The notes under the pieces: generated by a model
Database searches by the model: none
Seen by the model: the letters and a program-made list of their open reading frames with translations, nothing else
What the model was told of the DNA's origin: nothing
Assembly: GCA_001179505.1 (NCBI GenBank)
Contig: CDMY01000908.1
Span: 176,672 to 240,671, forward strand
Reading direction: 5' to 3'
Source: Vitrella brassicaformis CCMP3155
Taxonomy: Eukaryota; Protista; Chromerida
DNA: 64,000 nucleotides
Position numbers and translations under genes: made by a program
In this document: positions 44,201-54,492 of the stretch, piece after piece
Position numbering within the stretch: the first letter of the stretch is position 1
How the letters are laid out: every line of letters starts with the position of its first letter

Positions 44201-46705
44201 GACATGTACGGTGATAGGCATGTGAAGACCTCTGTGCGGTGCTGTATATGGCATGTGGGATTTGATGAATTGACATATGAGATCCATACACGCAAACAGT
44301 CTCATCTGATTGAATCCGCAATATCGAAACAGAGCTTTGAGATATAAAATGCAGGCAGCGAGAGAATGCAGCCTCTCGAAGATTGCCTGCACTTGTACAA
44401 GGCAATGAAGCTGCCTTTGCTATTCTGCGCAGACATTCAAGGCACGCTACCCTGCAAGACGCTGCATCTGGTTTTAGATACACACAGAGGGGATAAGAGA
44501 CACCACACACAGTGCACTGGCAAGTGAGTGGACATCGGTGTCAGCAGACGCACCTGCTGCGGCGTATTTGTAAGACACGGAAACCATGAAGACGAATCAC
44601 CACCACACATGTCTCACGGCTGAATCACTTCTTCTGTTTGGCCAGCCCATACAGTCGATCAAAGACGTTCTGCAAGCAGACATTCAAAGGTGTTGCTTAG
44701 TGATACGTCTCTATTGGCTGGCTGCAGGTACTCACCTTTGCATCGCGACCCCTTGGGTTGCTGTATTGGCTCGTGGCTCACATGTTGGGTTGCTGTCCGG
44801 CGAATCCCTGCCCCGGGCCGCCGGCCCCGAAGGCGCCCTGGCCAGGGAAGTTGCCGTAGCCCCGCATGCCCTGGGGGGTGGGGCCGCCGCCCATGCCCAT
44901 GCCCATGCCGCCGCCCATGCCGCCCATGCCCATGCCGCTGCCCACCCTCAACCTGTCCATGTCACCTGCAAAAGGGCGCGAGAGAGACACCTGCAAAAGT
45001 AGAACGACGTGCGTGTCTCTCTCGCGCACCTTCCTTCTGCTGCAACTGCCTTGTCAGCTCAGCCACCTGCCGCTGAGACGCTGAAAATTCGTCTAACACA
45101 CATTCACATGCCCGTATTCACTGTATTCGGCACTGGCTCACCTTGCAGCTCTTCGATGGTTGCCTGTTGCTGGCTGCTCTCTCGTTCGAGAGACTCCATC
45201 CGGAATTTATCTTCGCCACGTTTGCGGCGGAGGTCCAAGATTTCCTGGTCCGCTTCATCGATTTCCTGCTCGGCCTGCTGCCACATTCGGTGCACCTAAA
45301 GTAGCCACACAGACAGGTGCGTGCATGCGAACCCGCCAGAGACAAGCAGATTTCAAGCACGTCTACACGAACATCTGGGTTGACCACCCTGTTTGCGGCG
45401 TTGAGCAGCTCCTGTGCCGTCGGCCTGTCCTGGGGGGCCGCTGTGATGCCTCGCGTGACGAGCGGGCCGAGCGGGCGGGGCAAAGAGAGGGGCAGGAAGG
45501 CTGTGTTCTTCACACCGCCGCCGCTTAGCGAAAACCACTCTCCCAACCACAGCTCGGCGAGGATAACACACGCCCCAAACACATCCATCGACTTATCAAC
45601 GACGGCGGGAGGGCCCGCCTGGTGCTGCGGCGGCTGCTGGGGGACGTTGGGAAAGCCGGGCTGGGCAGGCGGCAGGAGGTTGGTGTTGGCCGACTCCTAG
45701 TGGCACTCGGGCAGCATGTACTCCCTTCTATATCCTGTCTCCAGCTCCACGCCCCTCGCCCACCGATGAATGCTGCTGTCCCGAAGTCAATGAGGTACAC
45801 CTTGTTTGTATCGTCTTCCAGCGGTATGTTATCTGACAGATGGAGACATACAGGCATACACAGAGACTGTGTGTATGCATGTCTCTTGTGCACCTGCTTG
45901 ATGCGCTTCACACCTACCTGGCTTGATGTATTCGCCTGAGTGCATGTAGACAAGGGCCGATAGCACTTGCTTGGCGATAGCAACGAACAGACAGACCGAC
46001 ATCCGCTTCTTGACCAGCTTCTCAAGGCTTTGGGCTTTCAGTATGGGTAGACAATTGCGTTTAGCCCATCGTCAAGCATCAGCCCCTCACAAGGAAGGAT
46101 GTTGGGTTGGCTGAGCCTCGACAAATTGACGGCTGACAACACACACACACAACACACGTACAAACACACACACATGGACAGAGAGGAAGAGAGAGACCAT
46201 GACTGAACAGCGCTATTGTGTTTCGGCCTTGCCACGTCCACCGTATCCATACCTTCCACAGTGGTCCAGGCCATTGGTTGCCGCCATGTTCTTCCCCGAA
46301 ACGCCCGGCGCCACGGCCTTACGTCCTTGTCGTCGGCGATTCTCACAGTCTTCAGGCCGTCGCTCGTGTCCCGAGCTTTGAGCACCTCGGACACCCCTGG
46401 TCACTTGTAGAGGACCTGCACGGTCCTGTATTGCTCGTATTCAGCCCGGCCGATGATGCGCAGCCCCTCTTGCTGTGCCTCGCGGCGAGCATCAGCTGGC
46501 GGAAACGGCCTAGCTCTGCCAGATCTTAAAGCAGGTTCTCCGCTGCTTCTGGGCTCAGGCGCCACCTTGACGCAGCTCGCCGGCCAGCCCATGAGTTGGT
46601 GAAGTCGTGCAGAGTCCTTGGGCAGAAGTCGTCAGCGAACATGGCGTACTGGTGGGCTCGGCCGAGGAAGACATCGAGCGGTTCGTCATGGGCCACGGTG
46701 GGCAG
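44195..46705 (-). pseudogene. Inverted kinase paralog pseudogene
   Basis: Colinear with the 41093 kinase (LPTVAHDEPLDV..., AVNLSRLSQPNI, DFGTAA, MDVFGACV, QDRPTAQELL, HRMWQQAEQEI, AIFERLHSLA). It has in-frame stops (ENLL*DL, VLYK*PGV), frameshifts and loss of HRD (MHSGEYIKP). Confidence 0.85.
44760..44927 (-). repeat. Near-identical 168-bp copy of PABP exon end plus donor site (source 22507-22674)
   Basis: Same sequence and orientation as 22507-22674 with about 3 substitutions seen by eye. Encodes MGGGMGMGMGGGPTPQGMRGYGNFPGQG(A/P)FGAGGPGQGFAGQQPN. Confidence 0.95.
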
Positions 46706-47197
46706 TAGACCTTGTTTGTGCCGTCCTCGACTAAGATGTAATCTGACAGGGAGACGCACAGACATTCGCATAAGACACGTTGACGCATTGACTCGTGCCT
46801 GCTGACTGCGCGGGCTCGATACTTACCGGGTTTTATGTCCCTGTGCACACACTGCTGCGAATGCATGTACGCAAGGGCCGACAGGATCTGCTTGGCGATA
46901 TGGAGGTAGAAAGAGGTGGGCAGGTGCTTTGTCACCATCTTGTCCAGGCTGCGGCCGTGTATGTACGGCATGAAGAGGGCAGTGACGCCGTTGTTTAGCA
47001 TCATGCCCTCGCAGCTGATGATGTTGGGGTGACTGAGCTTGGACAGGTTGATGGCTGATGCAAACACACACACACACACACACGCACAGAGGGAAAGACA
47101 GACGGGCCAGAGGTTGACAGACACAAGTCGCTATCACTTCTGTCCTTCCTACAGACATCATACCTTTGTTCGTGACCCACACCATTGGCCTGCGCCA
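46705..47197 (-). repeat. Near-identical inverted copy of kinase segment 41582-42067 (two introns included)
   Basis: Reverse complement matches 41582-42067 from tggcgcaggccaatgg to ggcacaaacaaggt, introns included, with few differences (e.g. DN to DY in the catalytic loop). Confidence 0.95.
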
Positions 47198-48490
47198 CTT
47201 GTGCGGCGATGGTAATACGAGGTCTGTATGAAGTCCATCAGAGAGCTTTCAGATGTAAAATATAGGCAGCAATCTGGAAGCAGGAGATTGACACGTGTGC
47301 ACGTGTGTGTGTGTGTGTGTGTGTGTGAATGTGTGCGTGAAACTACCGTCGGGGGGCTTGGTGGGTTGGAGGAGCTTGTGTGGGTCGGGTGAGTGAATAT
47401 TGTCACTGCCACCTGAACACGAGACATGAGGACAGAGGCATGACAGATGTGTCCTTCCCTGTGTTGCCAGCGTACCTTCGCTTGCCGTTGGCTGCCGGCG
47501 TTTGAAATCCCGTGTAGCAGGAGGCGTACTCAGCTGGTCGAGTACCAACGGCCTCGGCAGATTCTCCGCTGGTATCTTGTCCGTAGCAACCAATATTCCC
47601 AGCTTGAGTTGCATCGCCAGCCCCTCGGCATGGAATAGCTCCATTAAGAGAGGCAGAACGGGCAGCAGGTGGGTCATGTCCGTGTGTGTCTTGCGGGAAA
47701 AGTATGCCAAGACCATGGGCAGCACCACAGTCAGTGTTCCCCTCTCGTAGGCCTCCTTCAGGACGGTCTCCCAGCTGATTTGAGAGGCGGCAACAGGCGT
47801 GCCCAGCCCCCATGAAATAGCGGAGAGGAAACCCCCGAGGTTCTTGAGGCAGTCTCGGTACGCCTTGTCGTCCTCGTTCTCTGCGGCTGGATCCGCAAAG
47901 TCTAGCAAGCGACGAATGACATCAATCTGAGATCATGCATTGCACATGACGCACATGAGAGGGAATCTGTAGTGTGTCTGTCTGCGTTGCTGACGTGATT
48001 TGGCCTACAAGTGCATGTCTCACGAACTCTTGCTCGACACCCCGATTCAGTCCCTCGACCAGCTGCGCCAAAACAGTGTGGCTTGACGGAAAGCAGGAAG
48101 CCCTCAAGGCGATCAGATGGACGAGCCACTTGAAGTGGTCTTGGGTGATGGCGAGGAGGATTTCGCTCCCCTGAGAAGCAACACACACACGAACACACAC
48201 ACGCATACACGCACACAAACAAAGAAACAACCAACTCGTCTGAGTGTGTGTCGGCCATCATTGTTTGTACTCACCTTGCATCGGGGGCAGCAGCAATTGT
48301 TTCCATCGTTGCCTGAGTCGACATCGGTGACAGAATTCATGGACATTGGAGAGAATTCGAACGACCTCCTCACGAGGTTCCACAATAACCATTTCCTCCC
48401 CAATCCCTTTGAAGCAGACAGATAGGTGGCTGTAACAGCTGATATCATATTGAGGGTCAGTAGGCCATCAGGTTGAGATGGGTCAGCCAT
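47158..48490 (-). CDS. Stand-alone divergent CNOT1 CAF1-binding (MIF4G)-like domain protein
   Basis: HFKWLVHLIALRASCFPSSHTVLAQLV ... CLKNLGGFLSAISW...WETVLKEAYERGTLTVVLPMVLAYF ... LLMELFHAEGLAMQLKLGILV resembles the recalled CNOT1 segment W..YLVMKRVSIEPNFH...LKNLG.WLG...LLEAY..G.L..VVPFV...LAELH....L.LNLKFEIEV. Confidence 0.7.
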
Positions 48491-48708
48491 CTCCCTGTTG
48501 TGCTGCAGCCGAGGTGATGGGGTGGGGGAGGAGGGGAAGGTGGCGGGGCAGGGAGAATGGGATGCGCACGGGCGTTCGTAGGAAGATGATCCTCTTGAAT
48601 GATCCTGCAACCAAAGAGGAAAAAAAAAAGAAAAGAAAAAAAAAGAGAAATCGCGAAATTCTCGACGATTTCCCTGCTCCTCCTTTGGACCTTTTTGTCG
48701 CTCGGGAA

Positions 48709-51700
48709 ATGCACAGGGCCACGACAGAGATGCAGTCGGCCACGGAGGGCCCTCTGTCTTCGTCAAAGACCAGCCCCCTACCCCAGAACTTCAAGGCTGC
48801 TGCCGGGAAGTATCAGCCCATGCTGCGGAACAAGAGTGCCTCGGCCTCGGCATCCGGCATGGACCTGGAGCATTTCGACCACTCCGACGACAGCAACATG
48901 AGCCAGGTGCCCATCATTGGCTTCTTCGAACTCACAGCCCCGGGATTGCAGCAGGTCAGTTAGAGAACACCAGCTGATCTGTTGCTGTGGGGATGATCAT
49001 TCGGTGACGGTCGTGTGTACATGCAGCTTCGAGGCGACCAGAGTATCCCTCTCGGTGCCATATCTATGACCCCCGCCCAGACACGCGAGCAATCGCTTGC
49101 TCCCCCAAAGCAGCCGGGGGTCAACTTTGCCATGGGAGGCAAGAGGCGGACATCTCTGTCGTCTGCAGGGGGCGATCGGGAGAGAATTCCCTTCCGCGAC
49201 GTGTCCATGGTCAGCGGCGGGCGAAGGGGATCTCGTGAGAGCGTTGCAACCACCACGCTTCGCGGAAGGGGTGGTCGATGCGGCGACCTGGTTATAAGAT
49301 GGCAGTCGCTCATCAAGAGGTTGCCGTTCGTTGCTAAGGCCATCACTGCATTCTATCGGTGAGTAAGCGCTTGCAGATGGATACAGCATGCATCTGTGTG
49401 CATCCTCCACCAAATATGATACGTGAACTGTTCAGGATAATATATGTGGTCGACTATTACCTTGATGCGGTTGTGGCTGAGGGTCTGTACGAGCAGGCTG
49501 AGGAGGGCAGCTACCCGTACCTGTTTTACTTGCTGATGGTAAGCTCTATTGACAGCTACACCGACTGAGCACATCGCAAAATGACCTCCCTCTTTCATGT
49601 GTCCATCCGCTGACATCATGGTGGATCAGGTCATTCGATTGTCGTCCCATTCGGCGTACTCGTAGCGCTTCTCTTTGGGGCGTACTCGAAGATTTATGTC
49701 TTTGACCCAGGTAGGTAGCTGTGAAAAGGGACAGGGGGGCTGCAGATGGCAGAGACATTTATCCTTTGTCAATATGTTGTGTCGAGCAGTTCGGAAGTTC
49801 AACAAGATTGAGCGATTCTTCCTGCTGACGTTTTACCCTATCATCGTATCGATTGCATGTCTCACCACCGACATCGCCCTCGCAACATGGTGCCACGCAC
49901 GCCACAGAGCCATTCAGCACAAGCGTCTCACACATTGCGTACAAATTATCTGCTGTCAGGTACGTAGTCAACGATCTGGAGGACACGAAGCTGCTTCAGT
50001 TCTACAACCAATTGCGGTCTCTCGTAGTGACCATCGCAGCCACGCCTATCCAGCTCGGCCTGCAAATTGCAATCATTTTCCTCGCCAATGTACGCGAGCA
50101 ACAGAGGAAGAAGGAAAAATCACATGGGCAGTGGGATGGTGCGGTGCATTCATGCACTTCAGGAGCCGCCATCCGCCGACTTCATGGTGGGTGTTCTGAT
50201 ATCGGTCATCCGAGGGGTGGGCTCTATCAGGTAAGCTAATGGTTGAGGTGAGTGAGACACACATGCTCCCATAGCCGTCTGCTGTCCTCTGATTGCTCAG
50301 TGCGATCGTCGTCAACGCCCACGTGAGACAGCTGAGTGTTTGGAGCTATATGGAGGTGGTCATCAACCTGGGCGTTGGCCAGCTGCCCTTCCTGGGCGGC
50401 ATCAAGAAAGATAAAATAAGATTTGCCACATACGATAACATGGAGCTGGACCCCCTGGTCAGATGAGTCCCACTGACAGCGTCACGGCGGCCATACACAG
50501 ATACGTCGTCTGTCTCATTCTTTGCAGGATTTGGGTCAGCTGAGCAAAGCGCTGAAGGACAACCGATCTCTTGTGGTGCTGAAGGCCAACAACTGCGGCA
50601 TCCAACACATGACGGTCGACCCCATGTTAAGATCTGACTCGGGTAAAAGAGAGGCATACATCACTTGGTCCTTCTTCGTCAACCTGTATCCTTGTCATTT
50701 CAGCACGCTCTCACGTACTGTCGGCCTCGGGTGAGTGCTAGACAGACGGATATACCAGACGGACTCACAGCGACTTCATGTTTGTGTCTTCTCGGTGCAG
50801 GCCGGTCGCGAGCGCAATCCGTCTTCTCAGACAGATCCAGTGGCCTAGATGCACGGCAGGCGGCATACCTAGAAGGAGCAGACGCGCTTGAAGAGCCAAA
50901 GACCGACTACGTAACACACATCCACCCATTGCGCCACAAATTCAATCTCAGATGTGTATTCGGGTTTTTGTGTGTACAGGTCCGGGCCAAGCGGATGTCG
51001 AGCGGCAATGTACCCAGTCGGGGCGTGGCAGCAACCAAGTTCCTGATGGCGTGTGCCAAATCCAAGTCACTGCAGCAGCTTGATCTGGCAGAAAACCAGG
51101 TGAGATCCATCTCATAGAGCACACAGACGACAGGGACGCTTCATTTGGTTTGTGTCTCGTGTTCAGATCCCTCATAAGCCGCTAAAGCGGCTGTTGGCCG
51201 GCAACAAGAAGCTGAAGTCGCTTTCGCTCGCCAACAATAGGCTAGGAGACAAAGGTGAGCGCGTGCACATCCATAAGCTGTATGTGTGTTGACCGCATCT
51301 GATACCTCCTGTATGTTTGTGTGCAGGTGCCGCCACGCTGTGTGAGGGTCTGTGTGAGAACCGCGTCTTGGAGTACCTGGATATCTCCGGCAACGCGATT
51401 CACGGAGACATTGTCCTCACTCTCGCAAATGCCATCGCACAGTCGCAGATCAAATCGCTCGACCTCAACAGAAACTGTCAGTCAGACCGACAACACAGCA
51501 CACCACATGCAGGCCCACAGGCAACGAGCGTCCCTCCCCTCTCTCTCTGTGTGTTGTGCAGTCATCGGCCCGGCCATGACGGTGAAGTTCGTGAGTGTGC
51601 TGAAGGAGGCAGAGAGCGTCTCGCTGCAGCACCTCTCATACGCAGGCAACTTCACCAAGGTCAGAAGCAAAAACCAGCCACAAGTTAGGCATCAACGGTC

Positions 51701-53017
51701 TCTCTCTCCACCTGTCTGTGTGCAGGACAGCGGTGCTCTCGCATTCGCCGAGTGGTTGGAGAAAGAGCCCCCTCCGCCGATGGAGGAGCTGGACTTGAGC
51801 AAAAACTACATCACACGGGAGGGCCTTTTCGGCCTCAAACGTGCCGTTCTCTCGCAGCAGCCAAAGGTCATGGCAAACCTGGTGCTGCTCGATAATCTTA
51901 TCTGGGGTAAGACGGCCACTTGCGAGGGAGAGAGAGAGAGACATGGGTGGCTTCGTCTCAAACGTGCTGTGTAGAGGACACTCTGACAGAGTTGCCGCCC
52001 GACGCGCTGGTGGTCATGTCGGTCAACACAATGCCGCACAAGGAGAAAGAGCCGCCGGCCATGCAGAGGGAAGCGACGGTCGCATCATCCTCAACAGTCA
52101 GGACGGCAGAGGACCTCGAGCTAGAGAGAGCCGAGTTCACCGACTCATACAGGACACACGTCGCACTGCAGGTGGGCGTCCATCCCCACCCATATACAGC
52201 TTTCTGAGCGACATGTGTGTCTTTTCTCCCGCCTCAGGACCACCAGCACAAAAGGTTGTTCGACATTCTCAACGCCATAATCGATTGCCGCATCGAGATA
52301 CACCAAGCCAGGCTTACTGAGCTCGAGGCATCGCCACAACCACCAAAAGACAACAACAACAACGACGACGTTGCAATCGCCATCCGGACTCAGATGTGCC
52401 GGTAGAAGGGCCAATTGCCAGAGTGTCCTTGGAGAACTTCCCGCCTGCCCATGCCCATATCGACGGCAGCCGGCCTGAGAACCAGAGCCAGAGTGTGTCG
52501 GACGTGGGTATGGAGGAGATAGACTTGGAGAGGGCCAGCACTGTGGTTGAGACGCCAGAGCAGCGGATGATGCACCTGCTGGAAGTATATAAGAGACAGA
52601 GGGAGAGAGGGGGAGACACACATTACCCTCTCTGTGTGTGTCTGTGTGTGTGTATAGGAGTTGGTTGGGTATACGATTTTTCATTTCCACGACGAGGAGA
52701 ACATGTTCATCAAGCACCAGCTGCCCGCCAAGCGCATGACGCGCCACGTCCGCTTCCACCAGGCCCTCGTCGAGAAAGTCGGAGACGTCCTGCTCACCGT
52801 CGACTTCACCAGAATGGCGGTCGGTCAGCCTGTGTGTGTCTGTATGTCTCAAAGTGTGTGTGTGTGTGTGTGTTGATGCTCATGCGCGTGTGTGCAGGTG
52901 TGGGACGACTTGATAGCGTTTTTGAAGGACTGGCTGGTGCTGCACATCATCAATGTCGACCAGAAGGACTCTGCGCTCATACTACAGAGGCAGAACAAGT
53001 GGAAGTACATCCCGTGA
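48709..53017 (+). CDS. Multipass membrane - RNI-like LRR - hemerythrin protein
   Basis: About 5 hydrophobic exonic segments (49.3-50.4 kb). LRR exons (SLVVLKANNCGI, SLQQLDLAENQ, LKSLSLANNRLGDKG, LEYLDISGNAI, IKSLDLNRN, MEELDLSKNYI). Hemerythrin motifs DHQHKRLF, LLE|ELVGYTIFHFHDEE, RHVRFH and FLKDWLVLHIINVD. Two junctions (about 49540 and about 52400) are not unambiguously resolved. Confidence 0.75.
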
Positions 53018-54492
53018 GTTTTTCCCCTGACTCCTCGGTTTTCAGGCTGTGTCTCAGCTCGGTCTGTCCTCCTTATTTTTTTGCCTTTGTTGAAGACCGC
53101 AGTGCACGTGTGACGTGTGCGTGGGAGTGTGTCTGTGTGTGTGTTTCTTCTACATGGTGTGATGCTGGGAGCGATGGTCAGTCGGGCGGCCTGCTGTTCG
53201 AGCTCCTCGACGATGAGCTAATTTGCACTGGTTTGAAATGATGACGTATGGGCACTGTCCAGTCCACACGATGATGCAACGATGCATCACCTCACTCCCC
53301 CGCCCCCCCGACCTGTCTGTCTGTCGAGCAGCCTATACACTCATACGATTACGTGTGTATAAGCCAAGTGAGCGTCAGCTGAATCCTCTCGCTCTCAGTT
53401 GTGCCTTCGTTCATTCCCCGGCCCCACTCTCTCTCTCTCTCTCTCTCTTTATTCACACACACTTGTTTGTCTCTCCTCCACTCCAGCTATCCATCGTTCG
53501 TCTATTGACAGACACCGACCGACACAGAAGAGACTGTATTCAGCCACACAAGTAAGTACGTGACCAACACACACACACACACACACAGACACACACAGGC
53601 AGGCAGACTGAGCACTTTTGTGACATACGTACATCCAAGCAAACAAACAAGTAGGGGCAAGTAGGTAAGTCGGCAGGGAGGTCATGTGTGTGCAGCTGAG
53701 GCTCGCTCATCTGTGCGCTCCCCTGCCCACATGCATTCGGGAGGGGGCCCGGCGTACTCAACAGTCCTAATTTGTGCATGCGGTCCAAGCACTGCACACC
53801 AGGCCTGTGTGTATATGGTCACTCATCGACTACACACGCCCATTCGTCTGCCTGTCTGATTACGTACGTACCTTCAGGTGTCTGTGTGGGTGTGTGGGTG
53901 TGCGAGGGATGCAGGAGGCAAAAGCGAAGCAGCAGCAGGAAATGCGCGTACCCATCAATTCCCCTCCCTCCCTCCCTCGCTCCCCATTTGTCGCGCCAAC
54001 CGCCAACCGGCCGACACCCACACCAGGTCGTGTGCGTGTTGGCCTATTGGCCGCCCCCAAACAAACCCACAGAGCAACACACACGTGCAACACAACACGC
54101 AACAGCCACGCACACATGAGTCGAATCGAATTGATTTGGGATTGCTGGTAGCCTGTCTCTCTGTCTGTCTGTGTGGATGGGTGGATGGGTGGCAAAAGCG
54201 GAGGAACAAAATTGCAGCAGCGAAACACAAACACACAGACACCCTCCCTCCCTCCGCCCTTCAGTTGCCGTGTGGTGCGATGAAAGAGTAAAAACAAAAA
54301 GATAACGACAACAAAAATGAGAGTGCGAGAGAGTGCGGTAGAGAGAGTTTGTGTATGTGTGTGTGGATGGCCCCATATAGATGACATAGACAAGGCTTTG
54401 GTTGTCCCATCATCACTTCCCCCCCCCCACCCACCGACCCACACACACACACAGGTACACAGATACACCTGTTTGTTGATGTGTCTGTCTGT

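What the first reader, a model, noticed from the sequence alone, without database searches (positions are those of the whole stretch)
48709..53017. Membrane-LRR-hemerythrin: candidate undescribed O2/iron-sensing receptor
Seen: following the exons past the LRRs reveals a hemerythrin that the ORF track hides. EFTDSYRTHVALQ|DHQHKRLFDILNAI (His 52247), LLE|ELVGYTIFHFHDEE (His 52682, Glu 52694), RHVRFH (52745, 52757) and LKDWLVLHIINVD (His 52943, Asp 52958) supply all seven canonical di-iron ligands in correct order and spacing. Upstream are about 8 RNI/NLRC3-type LRRs and about 5 TM segments, one with an XK-like PIQLGLQI motif. Established: hemerythrin domains act as O2/Fe/NO sensors in bacterial DcrH and in animal FBXL5 (hemerythrin + F-box + LRR). 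A TM-LRR-hemerythrin fusion is not an architecture I know. Inference: a convergent sensor coupling O2/iron status to a membrane transporter, scramblase or signalling scaffold.
Basis: partly seen in the sequence, partly recalled or inferred. Interest (0 to 1): 0.85.

Follow-up and report, generated by a model that had tools for sequence, protein, structure and literature searches.

The report
Frame-broken membrane-LRR-hemerythrin gene in Vitrella
In the alga Vitrella brassicaformis one spliced RNA does carry membrane-spanning, leucine-rich-repeat and oxygen/iron-binding hemerythrin exons in a row, but that RNA has two one-base frame breaks, one of which cuts the hemerythrin domain in two. In this strain the proposed sensor is therefore most likely a recently broken gene, not a working single protein.

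Summary
All seven di-iron ligand codons sit at the stated coordinates, and the exon pieces match bacteriohemerythrin profiles in the correct order.

One spliced RNA contig (run X6, 3383 nt, 19 GT-AG introns removed) runs from ATG 48709 through the TM and LRR exons to beyond stop 53015-17. A JGI transcript contig (L002) matches its 3' 1.06 kb exactly.

That mRNA is not one ORF. It holds three ORFs, each shifted by -1:
- **ORF1:** 48709 to stop 49663 (238 aa).
- **ORF2:** up to TAG 52403. It holds the TMs, about 8 RI-type LRRs and hemerythrin helix A.
- **ORF3:** up to 53014. It holds hemerythrin helices B-D.

Break 1 lies at the exon 3/4 junction, inside a TM helix. Break 2 lies in the loop between helices A and B. 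The genome, DNA contigs and RNA contigs all agree at both sites.

The public annotation splits the locus into an 802-aa protein and a 118-aa protein, and hides break 1 behind an acceptor that no laid RNA contig uses.

The only relative found is Chromera velia Cvel_13949. No protein joining the pieces was found in the collections searched.

Verdict: a lineage-specific TM-LRR-hemerythrin fusion, probably a young, still-transcribed pseudogene. Rescue by minor splice forms is not excluded. Earlier notes in this scan describe similar RNA-confirmed frame breaks at other Vitrella loci.

The parts
48709..49538 (+). ORF1 coding part (exons 1-3: 48683-48954, 49027-49358, 49436-49538). It encodes 227 aa: a disordered N-terminus plus the first half of TM helix 1 (…YPYLFYLLM). 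Read on in this frame, it stops at TAG 49663-65 (238 aa).
   Evidence: Spliced RNA contig X6 record 21; translation of the assembled mRNA.
49536..49632 (+). Frame break 1, at the exon 3/exon 4 junction (49538|49630, intron 49539-49629). The downstream frame is shifted by -1, inside a TM helix (…LLM | (G)HSIVVPFGVLVALLFGAY). One missing base at the junction would explain it.
   Evidence: the joint 49537->49629 skips 91 nt, and the record lengths add up exactly. Also.
49630..50457 (+). Membrane region of ORF2 (exons 4-8). Hydrophobic segments are centred on HSIVVPFGVLVALLF, FLLTFYPIIVSIACL, LVVTIAATPIQLGLQIAII and VGVLISVIRGVGSISAIVV, plus a weaker one at EVVINLGVGQLPFLGG. No known family was matched.
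   Evidence: Kyte-Doolittle scan. No Pfam hits on the exons.
49692..49710 (+). Shortened exon 4 as implied by the public 802-aa gene model (acceptor AG 49690-91). It restores the frame by dropping 62 nt (21 aa of TM1). The laid RNA contig does not use it.
   Evidence: using this acceptor gives exactly 2409 nt, i.e. 802 aa plus stop, which is the annotated length. One search shows acceptor 49629 in RNA.
50528..51906 (+). LRR region of ORF2 (exons 9-16, including the 27-nt microexon 50704-50730). It holds about 7-8 RI/LRR_6-type repeats, with an ~85-aa low-complexity insert after the first repeat.
   Evidence: Pfam LRR_6 on exons 13, 14 and 16 (E 0.0039, 1.1e-4, 0.027). PF27087 and LRR families are on record for the annotated product.
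51975..52171 (+). Exon 17: a linker plus the start of the hemerythrin domain (…EFTDSYRTHVALQ, matching the 'W..y.vg' lead-in of bacteriohemerythrins).
   Evidence: Joints 51906|51975 and 52171|52238 in X6, X1 and L002. Profile alignment positions 7-32.
52238..52402 (+). End of ORF2, in exon 18: hemerythrin helix A (DHQHKRLFDILNAI, first His ligand at 52247-49), followed by a low-complexity tail.
   Evidence: TIGR02481 positions 14-32, E 0.084. Home-made bacterial Hr profile, 10.1 bits at positions 7-32.
52403..52405 (+). TAG that ends ORF2. It is present in the genome, in DNA contig X4, in RNA contig X6 and in JGI transcript L002.
   Evidence: 100% identity, no gaps over 1063 nt.
52321..52402 (+). 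Frame break 2. This is the overlap of ORF2 (frame of 48701) and ORF3 (frame of 48700). A 1-nt loss somewhere in this stretch would rejoin them.
   Evidence: There is no canonical slippery heptamer and no unusual downstream structure (z +0.81).
52402..52469 (+). Candidate cryptic 68-nt intron (GTAGAA…GGCAG). If spliced, it would remove the TAG and rejoin helix A to helices B-D in frame. No contig shows it spliced.
   Evidence: Enumeration. Exon 18 is contiguous in X6 record 21 and in L002.
52510..53017 (+). Annotated 118-aa 'hemerythrin-like' gene (CEM36899.1 / A0A0G4H025 = P0001), made of part of exon 18 plus exons 19 (52658-52819) and 20 (52898-53017). It holds helices B-D with ligands H52682, E52694, H52745, H52757, H52943 and D52958. 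The frame is open upstream to 52321.
   Evidence: PF01814 29.6 bits. DcrH-Hr 2awc E 4.8e-5 and McHr 4xpx E 5e-4.
53018..53442 (+). 3' untranslated region. The RNA contig runs about 240 nt beyond 53200, and L002 ends at 53253. It contains a GT microsatellite at 53115-53144.

Best explanation
The locus is a chromerid-specific fusion gene of Vitrella brassicaformis CCMP3155. In its intact form it encoded a ~930-aa multi-pass membrane protein with a cytosolic RI-type LRR domain. At the C-terminus it carried a bacteriohemerythrin-type (DcrH/McHr-like) di-iron domain, with a long disordered insert between helices A and B.

Inferred function of the intact form: the O2, redox or iron state of the di-iron four-helix bundle would change its fold or stability. 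That change would alter what the adjacent LRR scaffold binds at the membrane. This is the logic known from DcrH and FBXL5.

Shown for the sequenced strain: the gene carries two one-base frame disruptions, each equivalent to the loss of one base. One is at the exon 3/4 junction inside TM helix 1. The other is in the helix A-B loop, giving TAG 52403. Both are present in DNA and in the spliced mRNA.

Consequence: ordinary translation yields only a 238-aa N-terminal fragment. At best it yields an 802-aa TM-LRR protein ending after helix A, plus an orphan three-helix remnant. The locus is therefore most likely a young, still transcribed and correctly spliced pseudogene. The public annotation papers over it with one unsupported acceptor and a split into two genes.
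For: - **Single spliced RNA:** contig X6 record 21 covers 48683 to beyond 53200 with 19 GT-AG introns removed, and exon 18 is contiguous in it. JGI transcript contig L002 is 100% identical to the spliced model from 51957 to 53253, with the TAG retained.
- **DNA agrees:** DNA contig X4 record 7 is identical to the window over 48653-52590, with no indel.
- **Three ORFs:** translation of the mRNA gives three long ORFs in successive -1 frames.
- **Break 1 is a lesion:** the 62 nt after break 1 encode a clean TM segment only in the shifted frame, and it continues the hydrophobic end of exon 3. This shows a lesion, not non-coding sequence.
- **Break 2 fits a base loss:** frame 0 is open for 63 codons upstream of ATG 52510 and overlaps ORF2 by 27 codons, as expected from a 1-nt loss.
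- **Hemerythrin pieces:** they are in profile order and carry all seven ligands.
- **Annotation:** 802 aa plus 118 aa. The length of 802 aa is reproduced exactly by acceptor 49691.
- **No joined protein:** none was found in a 1.84-billion-representative search or in length-limited searches.
- **No recoding signal:** and direct reading of the sequence.
- **Leads only:** earlier scan notes report other RNA-confirmed frame-broken multidomain genes in this genome.
Against: - There are only two lesions and no in-frame stop in about 930 codons. All seven metal ligands and the LRR consensus are intact, so any decay is very recent, or the gene is still used.
- In-frame alternatives exist on paper at both breaks: acceptor 49691, and a 68-nt GT..AG intron at 52402-52469 whose retention gives an immediate TAG. 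Contigs drop minor isoforms, so a productive minor or conditional mRNA cannot be excluded.
- Break 1 rests on a single RNA contig.
- X6 and the JGI assembly may not come from independent cultures.
- No raw reads, proteomics or second strain could be examined.
Confidence: 0.55

Rival explanations
1. The gene is functional but regulated by unproductive splicing. The assembled contigs show the dominant, non-productive form. A minor or condition-specific isoform would use an in-frame exon 3/4 junction (for example acceptor 49691) and remove a 68-nt intron at 52402-52469. That isoform would give a single TM-LRR-hemerythrin protein.
For: -: intron 52402-52469 has GT..CAG ends and a length inside the range of the 19 real introns (61-91 nt). 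Its donor overlaps the TAG, so retention stops translation at once.
- acceptor 49691 restores the frame, and it is evidently what the public gene model uses.
- All ligands are intact.
- Contig assemblies hide minor isoforms (stated).
- An earlier scan note reports another Vitrella sensor gene whose dominant RNA is spliced unproductively (a lead only).
Against: - No contig in four runs, nor the JGI transcript, shows either event.
- All 19 other introns are cleanly removed in the same contig.
- Acceptor 49691 would delete 21 aa of an obviously coding TM helix.
- Nine GT..AG pairs of typical length restore the frame in exon 18 by chance alone.
- Frame 0 is open through the putative intron, which a non-coding intron would not require.
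- No joined protein was found among the gene calls of the collections searched.
Confidence: 0.22
2. There are two separate working products, as annotated: an 802-aa (or N-terminally shorter) membrane LRR protein ending just after a vestigial helix A, and a small 118-aa hemerythrin-like protein translated from ATG 52510. The second could come from the same RNA or from a shorter one. The two might reassemble non-covalently.
For: - Public annotation.
- ATG 52510 has G at -3 and G at +4.
- The ORF3 product alone passes the Pfam hemerythrin cut-off.
- The Chromera relative is annotated as a separate 387-aa protein whose Pfam match also starts at profile position 31.
- One X6 contig joins unknown sequence to the exon 18 acceptor, so other 5' ends may exist.
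Against: - ORF3 lies more than 2.4 kb downstream of the first ATG on the only RNA seen, after long ORFs, so scanning ribosomes should not reach it.
- Without helix A it lacks one of the seven ligands and a quarter of the four-helix bundle.
- ORF3 stays open 63 codons upstream of its ATG and overlaps ORF2, which looks like a former continuous frame.
- Break 1 still disables the upstream product.
Confidence: 0.12
3. Programmed recoding: ribosomes shift -1 at both sites and make the full-length fusion from the mRNA as seen.
For: - Both breaks need the same -1 shift.
- A partial slippery site, A_CCA_AAA_G, lies at 52342-49 inside the overlap.
Against: - There is no X_XXY_YYZ heptamer in the overlap of break 1, which is pinned to the exon junction.
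- The region downstream of the only near-slippery site folds no better than shuffles (z +0.81).
- Two independent -1 sites in one cellular gene would be without precedent.
Confidence: 0.04

Closest known systems
DcrH (Desulfovibrio vulgaris chemoreceptor with a C-terminal hemerythrin domain; PDB 2awc/2avk) and Methylococcus capsulatus bacteriohemerythrin (4xpx)
   Same: The hemerythrin subfamily is the same. ORF3 aligns to DcrH-Hr at E 4.8e-5 and to McHr at E 5e-4. The best NCBIfam models are bact_hemeryth and TIGR02481. The ligand pattern H / HxxxE / HxxxH / HxxxxD is present. As in DcrH, the domain sits at the C-terminus of a membrane-anchored, multidomain, presumably cytosolic-facing protein.
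   Different: This is a eukaryotic nuclear gene with 19 spliceosomal introns. The partner domains are RI-type LRRs and an unclassified multi-pass membrane region, not HAMP/MCP. There is a roughly 90-aa insert between helices A and B, and the reading frame is broken there.
FBXL5 (animal iron/oxygen sensor: N-terminal hemerythrin-like domain, F-box, LRRs)
   Same: A di-iron hemerythrin-type domain is combined with LRRs in one gene. This suggests a metal- or O2-dependent switch on a protein-binding scaffold.
   Different: The domain order is reversed. No F-box is on record. The hemerythrin belongs to the O2-binding bacterial type, whereas the FBXL5 domain is not detectably similar to O2-binding hemerythrins (PMC4919030). 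A membrane region is present. At most this is convergence, not membership.
Chromera velia Cvel_13949 (A0A0G4IFN6, 387 aa, 'hemerythrin-like domain-containing protein')
   Same: It is the only close relative found. It is 58% identical over exon 19, has the same ligands, the same C-terminal tail (…W.Y.P) and the same acidic stretch before helix B.
   Different: It is annotated as a stand-alone protein with a ~290-aa low-complexity N-terminus. Helix A is at best a weak match (HNHQEVGSLL, E 0.83) and neither Pfam nor my profile found it. I could not examine whether TM-LRR exons lie upstream, because the locus could not be fetched.
LRRC8/SWELL1-type proteins (four-TM channel domain followed by cytosolic LRRs); from my own knowledge
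   Same: The general layout is shared: an N-terminal multi-pass membrane domain followed by a cytosolic LRR domain.
   Different: No sequence relationship was detected or tested beyond negative Pfam results. The LRR type is different (RI-like), and there is a hemerythrin tail.

Membership tests
O2-binding hemerythrin / bacteriohemerythrin domain (PF01814, TIGR02481, NF033749) | Significant profile match | tested here: met
   The ORF3 product (P0006) scores 29.6 bits on PF01814 against a cut-off of 25.3, E 1.1e-6. Exon 19 alone hits NF033749 at E 2.9e-6. PDB DcrH-Hr matches at E 4.8e-5. The NCBIfam whole-protein cut-offs are not reached by single exons.
O2-binding hemerythrin / bacteriohemerythrin domain (PF01814, TIGR02481, NF033749) | Seven di-iron ligands, H…HxxxE…HxxxH…HxxxxD, in order | tested here: met
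   The codons are at 52247, 52682/52694, 52745/52757 and 52943/52958. They align with the ligand columns of DcrH/McHr and of a bacterial Hr profile.
O2-binding hemerythrin / bacteriohemerythrin domain (PF01814, TIGR02481, NF033749) | All four helices of the bundle in one polypeptide | tested here: not met
   Helix A ends ORF2 (TAG 52403). Helices B-D lie in ORF3, in a different frame of the same unspliced exon. This is seen in X6 and L002 RNA contigs and in DNA.
O2-binding hemerythrin / bacteriohemerythrin domain (PF01814, TIGR02481, NF033749) | Binds two Fe and O2 reversibly | not testable with these tools
   This needs expression and spectroscopy.
FBXL5-type iron sensor | N-terminal hemerythrin-like domain followed by an F-box and LRRs | tested here: not met
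   The hemerythrin is C-terminal. Only LRR families are on record for the 802-aa product, with no F-box. No exon piece scanned gave an F-box hit.
Ribonuclease-inhibitor-type LRR proteins (Pfam LRR_6) | Tandem 28-29-residue repeats matching LRR_6 | tested here: met
   LRR_6 hits on exons 13, 14 and 16 (E 0.0039, 1.1e-4, 0.027). PF27087 and LRR_1/4/6 are on record for the annotated product. About 7-8 repeats can be read in the translation.
   The TM exons give no Pfam hit, and no such family is on record for the annotated 802-aa product. Caveat: I could scan the exons only one at a time, which is insensitive.
Programmed -1 ribosomal frameshift sites | X_XXY_YYZ slippery heptamer in the overlap, plus a stable downstream structure | tested here: not met
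   There is no heptamer at break 1. There is only a partial site, A_CCA_AAA_G, at break 2, and its downstream 121 nt fold at z +0.81 relative to shuffles (sequence).

The most novel reading that the evidence does not exclude
The two frame breaks are not decay but a switch. Under particular conditions (for example hypoxia or iron limitation) Vitrella would make an in-frame isoform, or recode, and so produce a membrane-anchored LRR protein with a C-terminal O2-binding hemerythrin. That would be a eukaryotic, membrane-bound counterpart of bacterial DcrH, with an architecture described nowhere else. Alternatively, helix A on the LRR protein and the three-helix ORF3 product could assemble as a split, iron-dependent hemerythrin.
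Probability: 0.2. Interest if true: 0.7.

Novelty: new variant of a known kind. Interest (0 to 1): 0.38.

Why it matters
O2-binding hemerythrins are rare in eukaryotes. One survey found them in 4 of 135 genomes (PMC4919030), and there they are single-domain or poorly characterised long proteins. A nuclear, intron-rich gene that puts such a domain behind LRRs and a membrane domain shows that an apicomplexan-related alga wired a bacterial-type O2/iron sensor domain to a eukaryotic protein-binding scaffold. This happened independently of animal FBXL5.

The practical lesson is about annotation. The public gene models (802 aa plus 118 aa) hide one frame break and split the hemerythrin domain, so domain-architecture surveys would miss both the fusion and its disruption.

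Together with earlier scan notes, this adds to a list of transcribed, correctly spliced but frame-broken multidomain genes in Vitrella. That list deserves a genome-wide look: is it mutational load in the culture, or regulated unproductive transcripts?

Tried and rejected
- **Pfam on single exons** missed the hemerythrin. NCBIfam and the stored ORF3 proteins were needed.
- **Representative search** with exon 19 over 1.84 billion proteins gave only the window's own 118-aa protein, Chromera Cvel_13949 and three bacterial double hemerythrins. No long fusion protein appeared.
- **The search for homologous proteins** with Cvel_13949 residues 285-387 and with the Vitrella/Chromera alignment found only the queries' own clusters. 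A search with the exon 1 region for ORF1-sized products found nothing.
- **The metagenome scan** returned only four distant loci at 30-34% identity and no chromerid transcript.
- **The Chromera locus** could not be fetched, so I could not check whether the fusion or the breaks are shared.
- **The full-length 802-aa protein** could not be used as a query. Homologues of the TM-LRR part therefore remain unsearched.
- **Programmed frameshifting** was rejected: no heptamer at break 1 and no structure at break 2.
- **Assembly error** was rejected: DNA contigs and RNA contigs from several runs agree base for base.
- **Alternative GT/GC-AG pairs** that restore the frame were enumerated. Many exist, so their existence alone is no evidence. 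None is seen in RNA.
- **The 30-nt loose end** at 52234 was searched in the window and not found.
- **Structure prediction** was not run. It could not take the joined domain by reference, and the sequence evidence already settles family membership.


Full report
**Organism and locus.** The window matches contig CDMY01000908.1 of Vitrella brassicaformis CCMP3155 (GCA_001179505.1). The public record calls two genes on the + strand here. One is an 802-aa LRR protein at window 48709-52405. The other is a 118-aa 'hemerythrin-like' protein (CEM36899.1, UniProt A0A0G4H025) at 52510-53017.

**Transcript structure.**
- I laid public runs on 48600-53200. Run X6 holds a 3383-nt contig with intron-sized GT..AG skips, so it is cDNA-derived.
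- It runs from 48683 to beyond 53200 and removes 19 introns of 61-91 nt.
- Run X1 shows the joints 52171|52238 and 52819|52898.
- A JGI transcript contig (L002, 1080 nt) is 100% identical, without gaps, to my spliced model from 51957 to 53253.
- DNA-type contigs (X4 record 7) contain the introns and are identical to the window.
- Membrane, LRR and hemerythrin exons are therefore on one RNA. The end of the first annotated gene and the start of the second lie in the same exon (exon 18, 52238-52584).

**Reading frames.** The spliced mRNA is not one ORF.
- *ORF1* starts at ATG 48709 and runs through exons 1-3. After the exon 3/4 junction (49538|49630) it stops at 49663.
- *ORF2*, shifted by -1, runs from exon 4 to TAG 52403.
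- *ORF3*, shifted by -1 again, is open from 52321 to TGA 53015-17.
- *Break 1* falls inside a transmembrane helix. Exon 3 ends …YPYLFYLLM, and the next 62 nt encode (G)HSIVVPFGVLVALLFGAYSK only in the shifted frame. This stretch was evidently coding, and one base is missing at the junction.
- *The public model and break 1.* Its length of 802 aa is reproduced exactly if acceptor 49691 is used in place of the RNA-supported 49629. That choice deletes those 21 residues. The annotation therefore hides break 1.
- *Break 2* lies within 52321-52402, in the low-complexity loop after hemerythrin helix A. Exon 18 is unspliced in X6 and L002, so TAG 52403 is in the mRNA.

**The hemerythrin.**
- By NCBIfam, exon 18 matches TIGR02481 positions 14-32 (E 0.084). 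Exon 19 matches bact_hemeryth positions 49-91 (E 2.9e-6). Exon 20 matches positions 104-124 (E 1.5e-3).
- The ORF3 product passes the Pfam PF01814 cut-off, but only from profile position 32.
- It aligns with DcrH-Hr (2awc, E 4.8e-5) and M. capsulatus bacteriohemerythrin (4xpx), with HxxxE, HxxxH and HxxxxD in register.
- A profile built from three bacterial double hemerythrins places FTDSYRTHVALQDHQHKRLFDILNAI on positions 7-32. The score rises from 57.8 to 66.3 bits when helix A is put next to helices B-D, with X at the break.
- The domain is therefore a genuine O2-binding-type hemerythrin, with a roughly 90-residue insert between helices A and B. In this mRNA it is cut between the first ligand and the other six.

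**The rest of the protein.**
- Exons 13, 14 and 16 hit Pfam LRR_6. The annotated product has LRR families and PF27087 on record. About 7-8 RI-type repeats can be read.
- Hydropathy gives four strong and one or two weaker membrane segments.
- No family matches the membrane part, and the 'XK-like' idea has no support.
- LRR exon 16, linker exon 17 and helix A are in one frame. The LRR-hemerythrin fusion is therefore real at the ORF level as far as helix A.

**Relatives.**
- An exhaustive search with exon 19 found only the window's own 118-aa protein, Chromera velia Cvel_13949 (387 aa, 58% identity, all six ligands of helices B-D kept) and three bacterial proteins.
- Length-limited searches added nothing. 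The metagenome scan gave only distant loci at 30-34% identity.
- In Chromera, a helix A equivalent is at best a weak match. Its genomic neighbourhood could not be fetched.
- No protein joining ORF2 and ORF3 was found in the collections searched.
- A survey of O2-binding hemerythrins lists no such architecture and found the domain in only 4 of 135 eukaryotic genomes (PMC4919030).

**Can the breaks be bridged?**
- *Recoding.* There is no slippery heptamer at break 1. Near break 2 there is only A_CCA_AAA_G, with no unusual downstream structure (z +0.81).
- *Splicing.* A 68-nt GT..AG intron at 52402-52469 would remove the TAG and restore the frame. Nine GT..AG pairs of typical length do the same by chance, and no contig shows any of them spliced.
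- *Frame 0.* It is open through that stretch, which fits a base loss better than an intron.
- *Break 1.* The in-frame alternatives either delete part of the TM helix or need poor GC donors.
- *Limit of the data.* Contigs drop minor isoforms, so a rare productive mRNA cannot be excluded.

**Conclusion.**
In the reference strain, however, the gene is interrupted twice in DNA and RNA.
- I consider a young, still expressed pseudogene of a chromerid-specific TM-LRR-hemerythrin fusion the most likely reading (about 0.55).
- The rivals are regulated unproductive splicing (about 0.22), two separate products (about 0.12) and recoding (about 0.04).
- Earlier notes of this scan describe similar RNA-confirmed frame breaks, and annotation introns that hide them, at other Vitrella loci. 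I used them as leads only.

Noticed in passing
window 49539-49710: The public 802-aa gene model can be reproduced only with acceptor AG 49690-91 (a 153-nt intron). That choice skips 62 nt which encode most of a TM helix. The RNA contig uses acceptor 49628-29. The annotation therefore masks a frame break.
   Followed up: yes
window 52234-52238: One contig of run X6 carries at least 255 nt of sequence that is absent from the 64-kb window (…GGCTCTCCAAA), joined exactly at the acceptor of exon 18. It could be a distant alternative 5' exon, trans-splicing, a paralogue or an assembly chimera.
   Followed up: partly
window 50704-50730: A 27-nt microexon (RSHVLSAS region) lies between two ordinary introns in the low-complexity insert of the LRR region. 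It is used in the RNA contig.
   Followed up: no
window 52591-52661, 52818-52887, 51926-51945, 53115-53144: GT/CA and GA microsatellites fill much of several introns and the 3' UTR. They caused the read tool to skip these stretches and produced many loose ends from unrelated loci.
   Followed up: no
window 46555-48346 (- strand; L001 46-1837): The upstream neighbour, on the opposite strand, is annotated as a 388-aa protein kinase that also has a CNOT1_CAF1_bind Pfam hit on record. That is an odd pairing.
   Followed up: no
P0002 (Chromera velia Cvel_13949), residues 1-290: The Chromera relative has a ~290-aa low-complexity N-terminus before helix B, and its Pfam match, like that of Vitrella ORF3, starts at profile position 31. 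Either its helix A is very divergent, or its gene model is also cut at the same place.
   Followed up: partly
genome-wide (earlier notes): Several other Vitrella loci were noted as transcribed and spliced but frame-broken multidomain genes, or as having annotation introns that hide frame breaks. This locus adds two more breaks. A genome-wide count against raw reads seems worthwhile.
   Followed up: no
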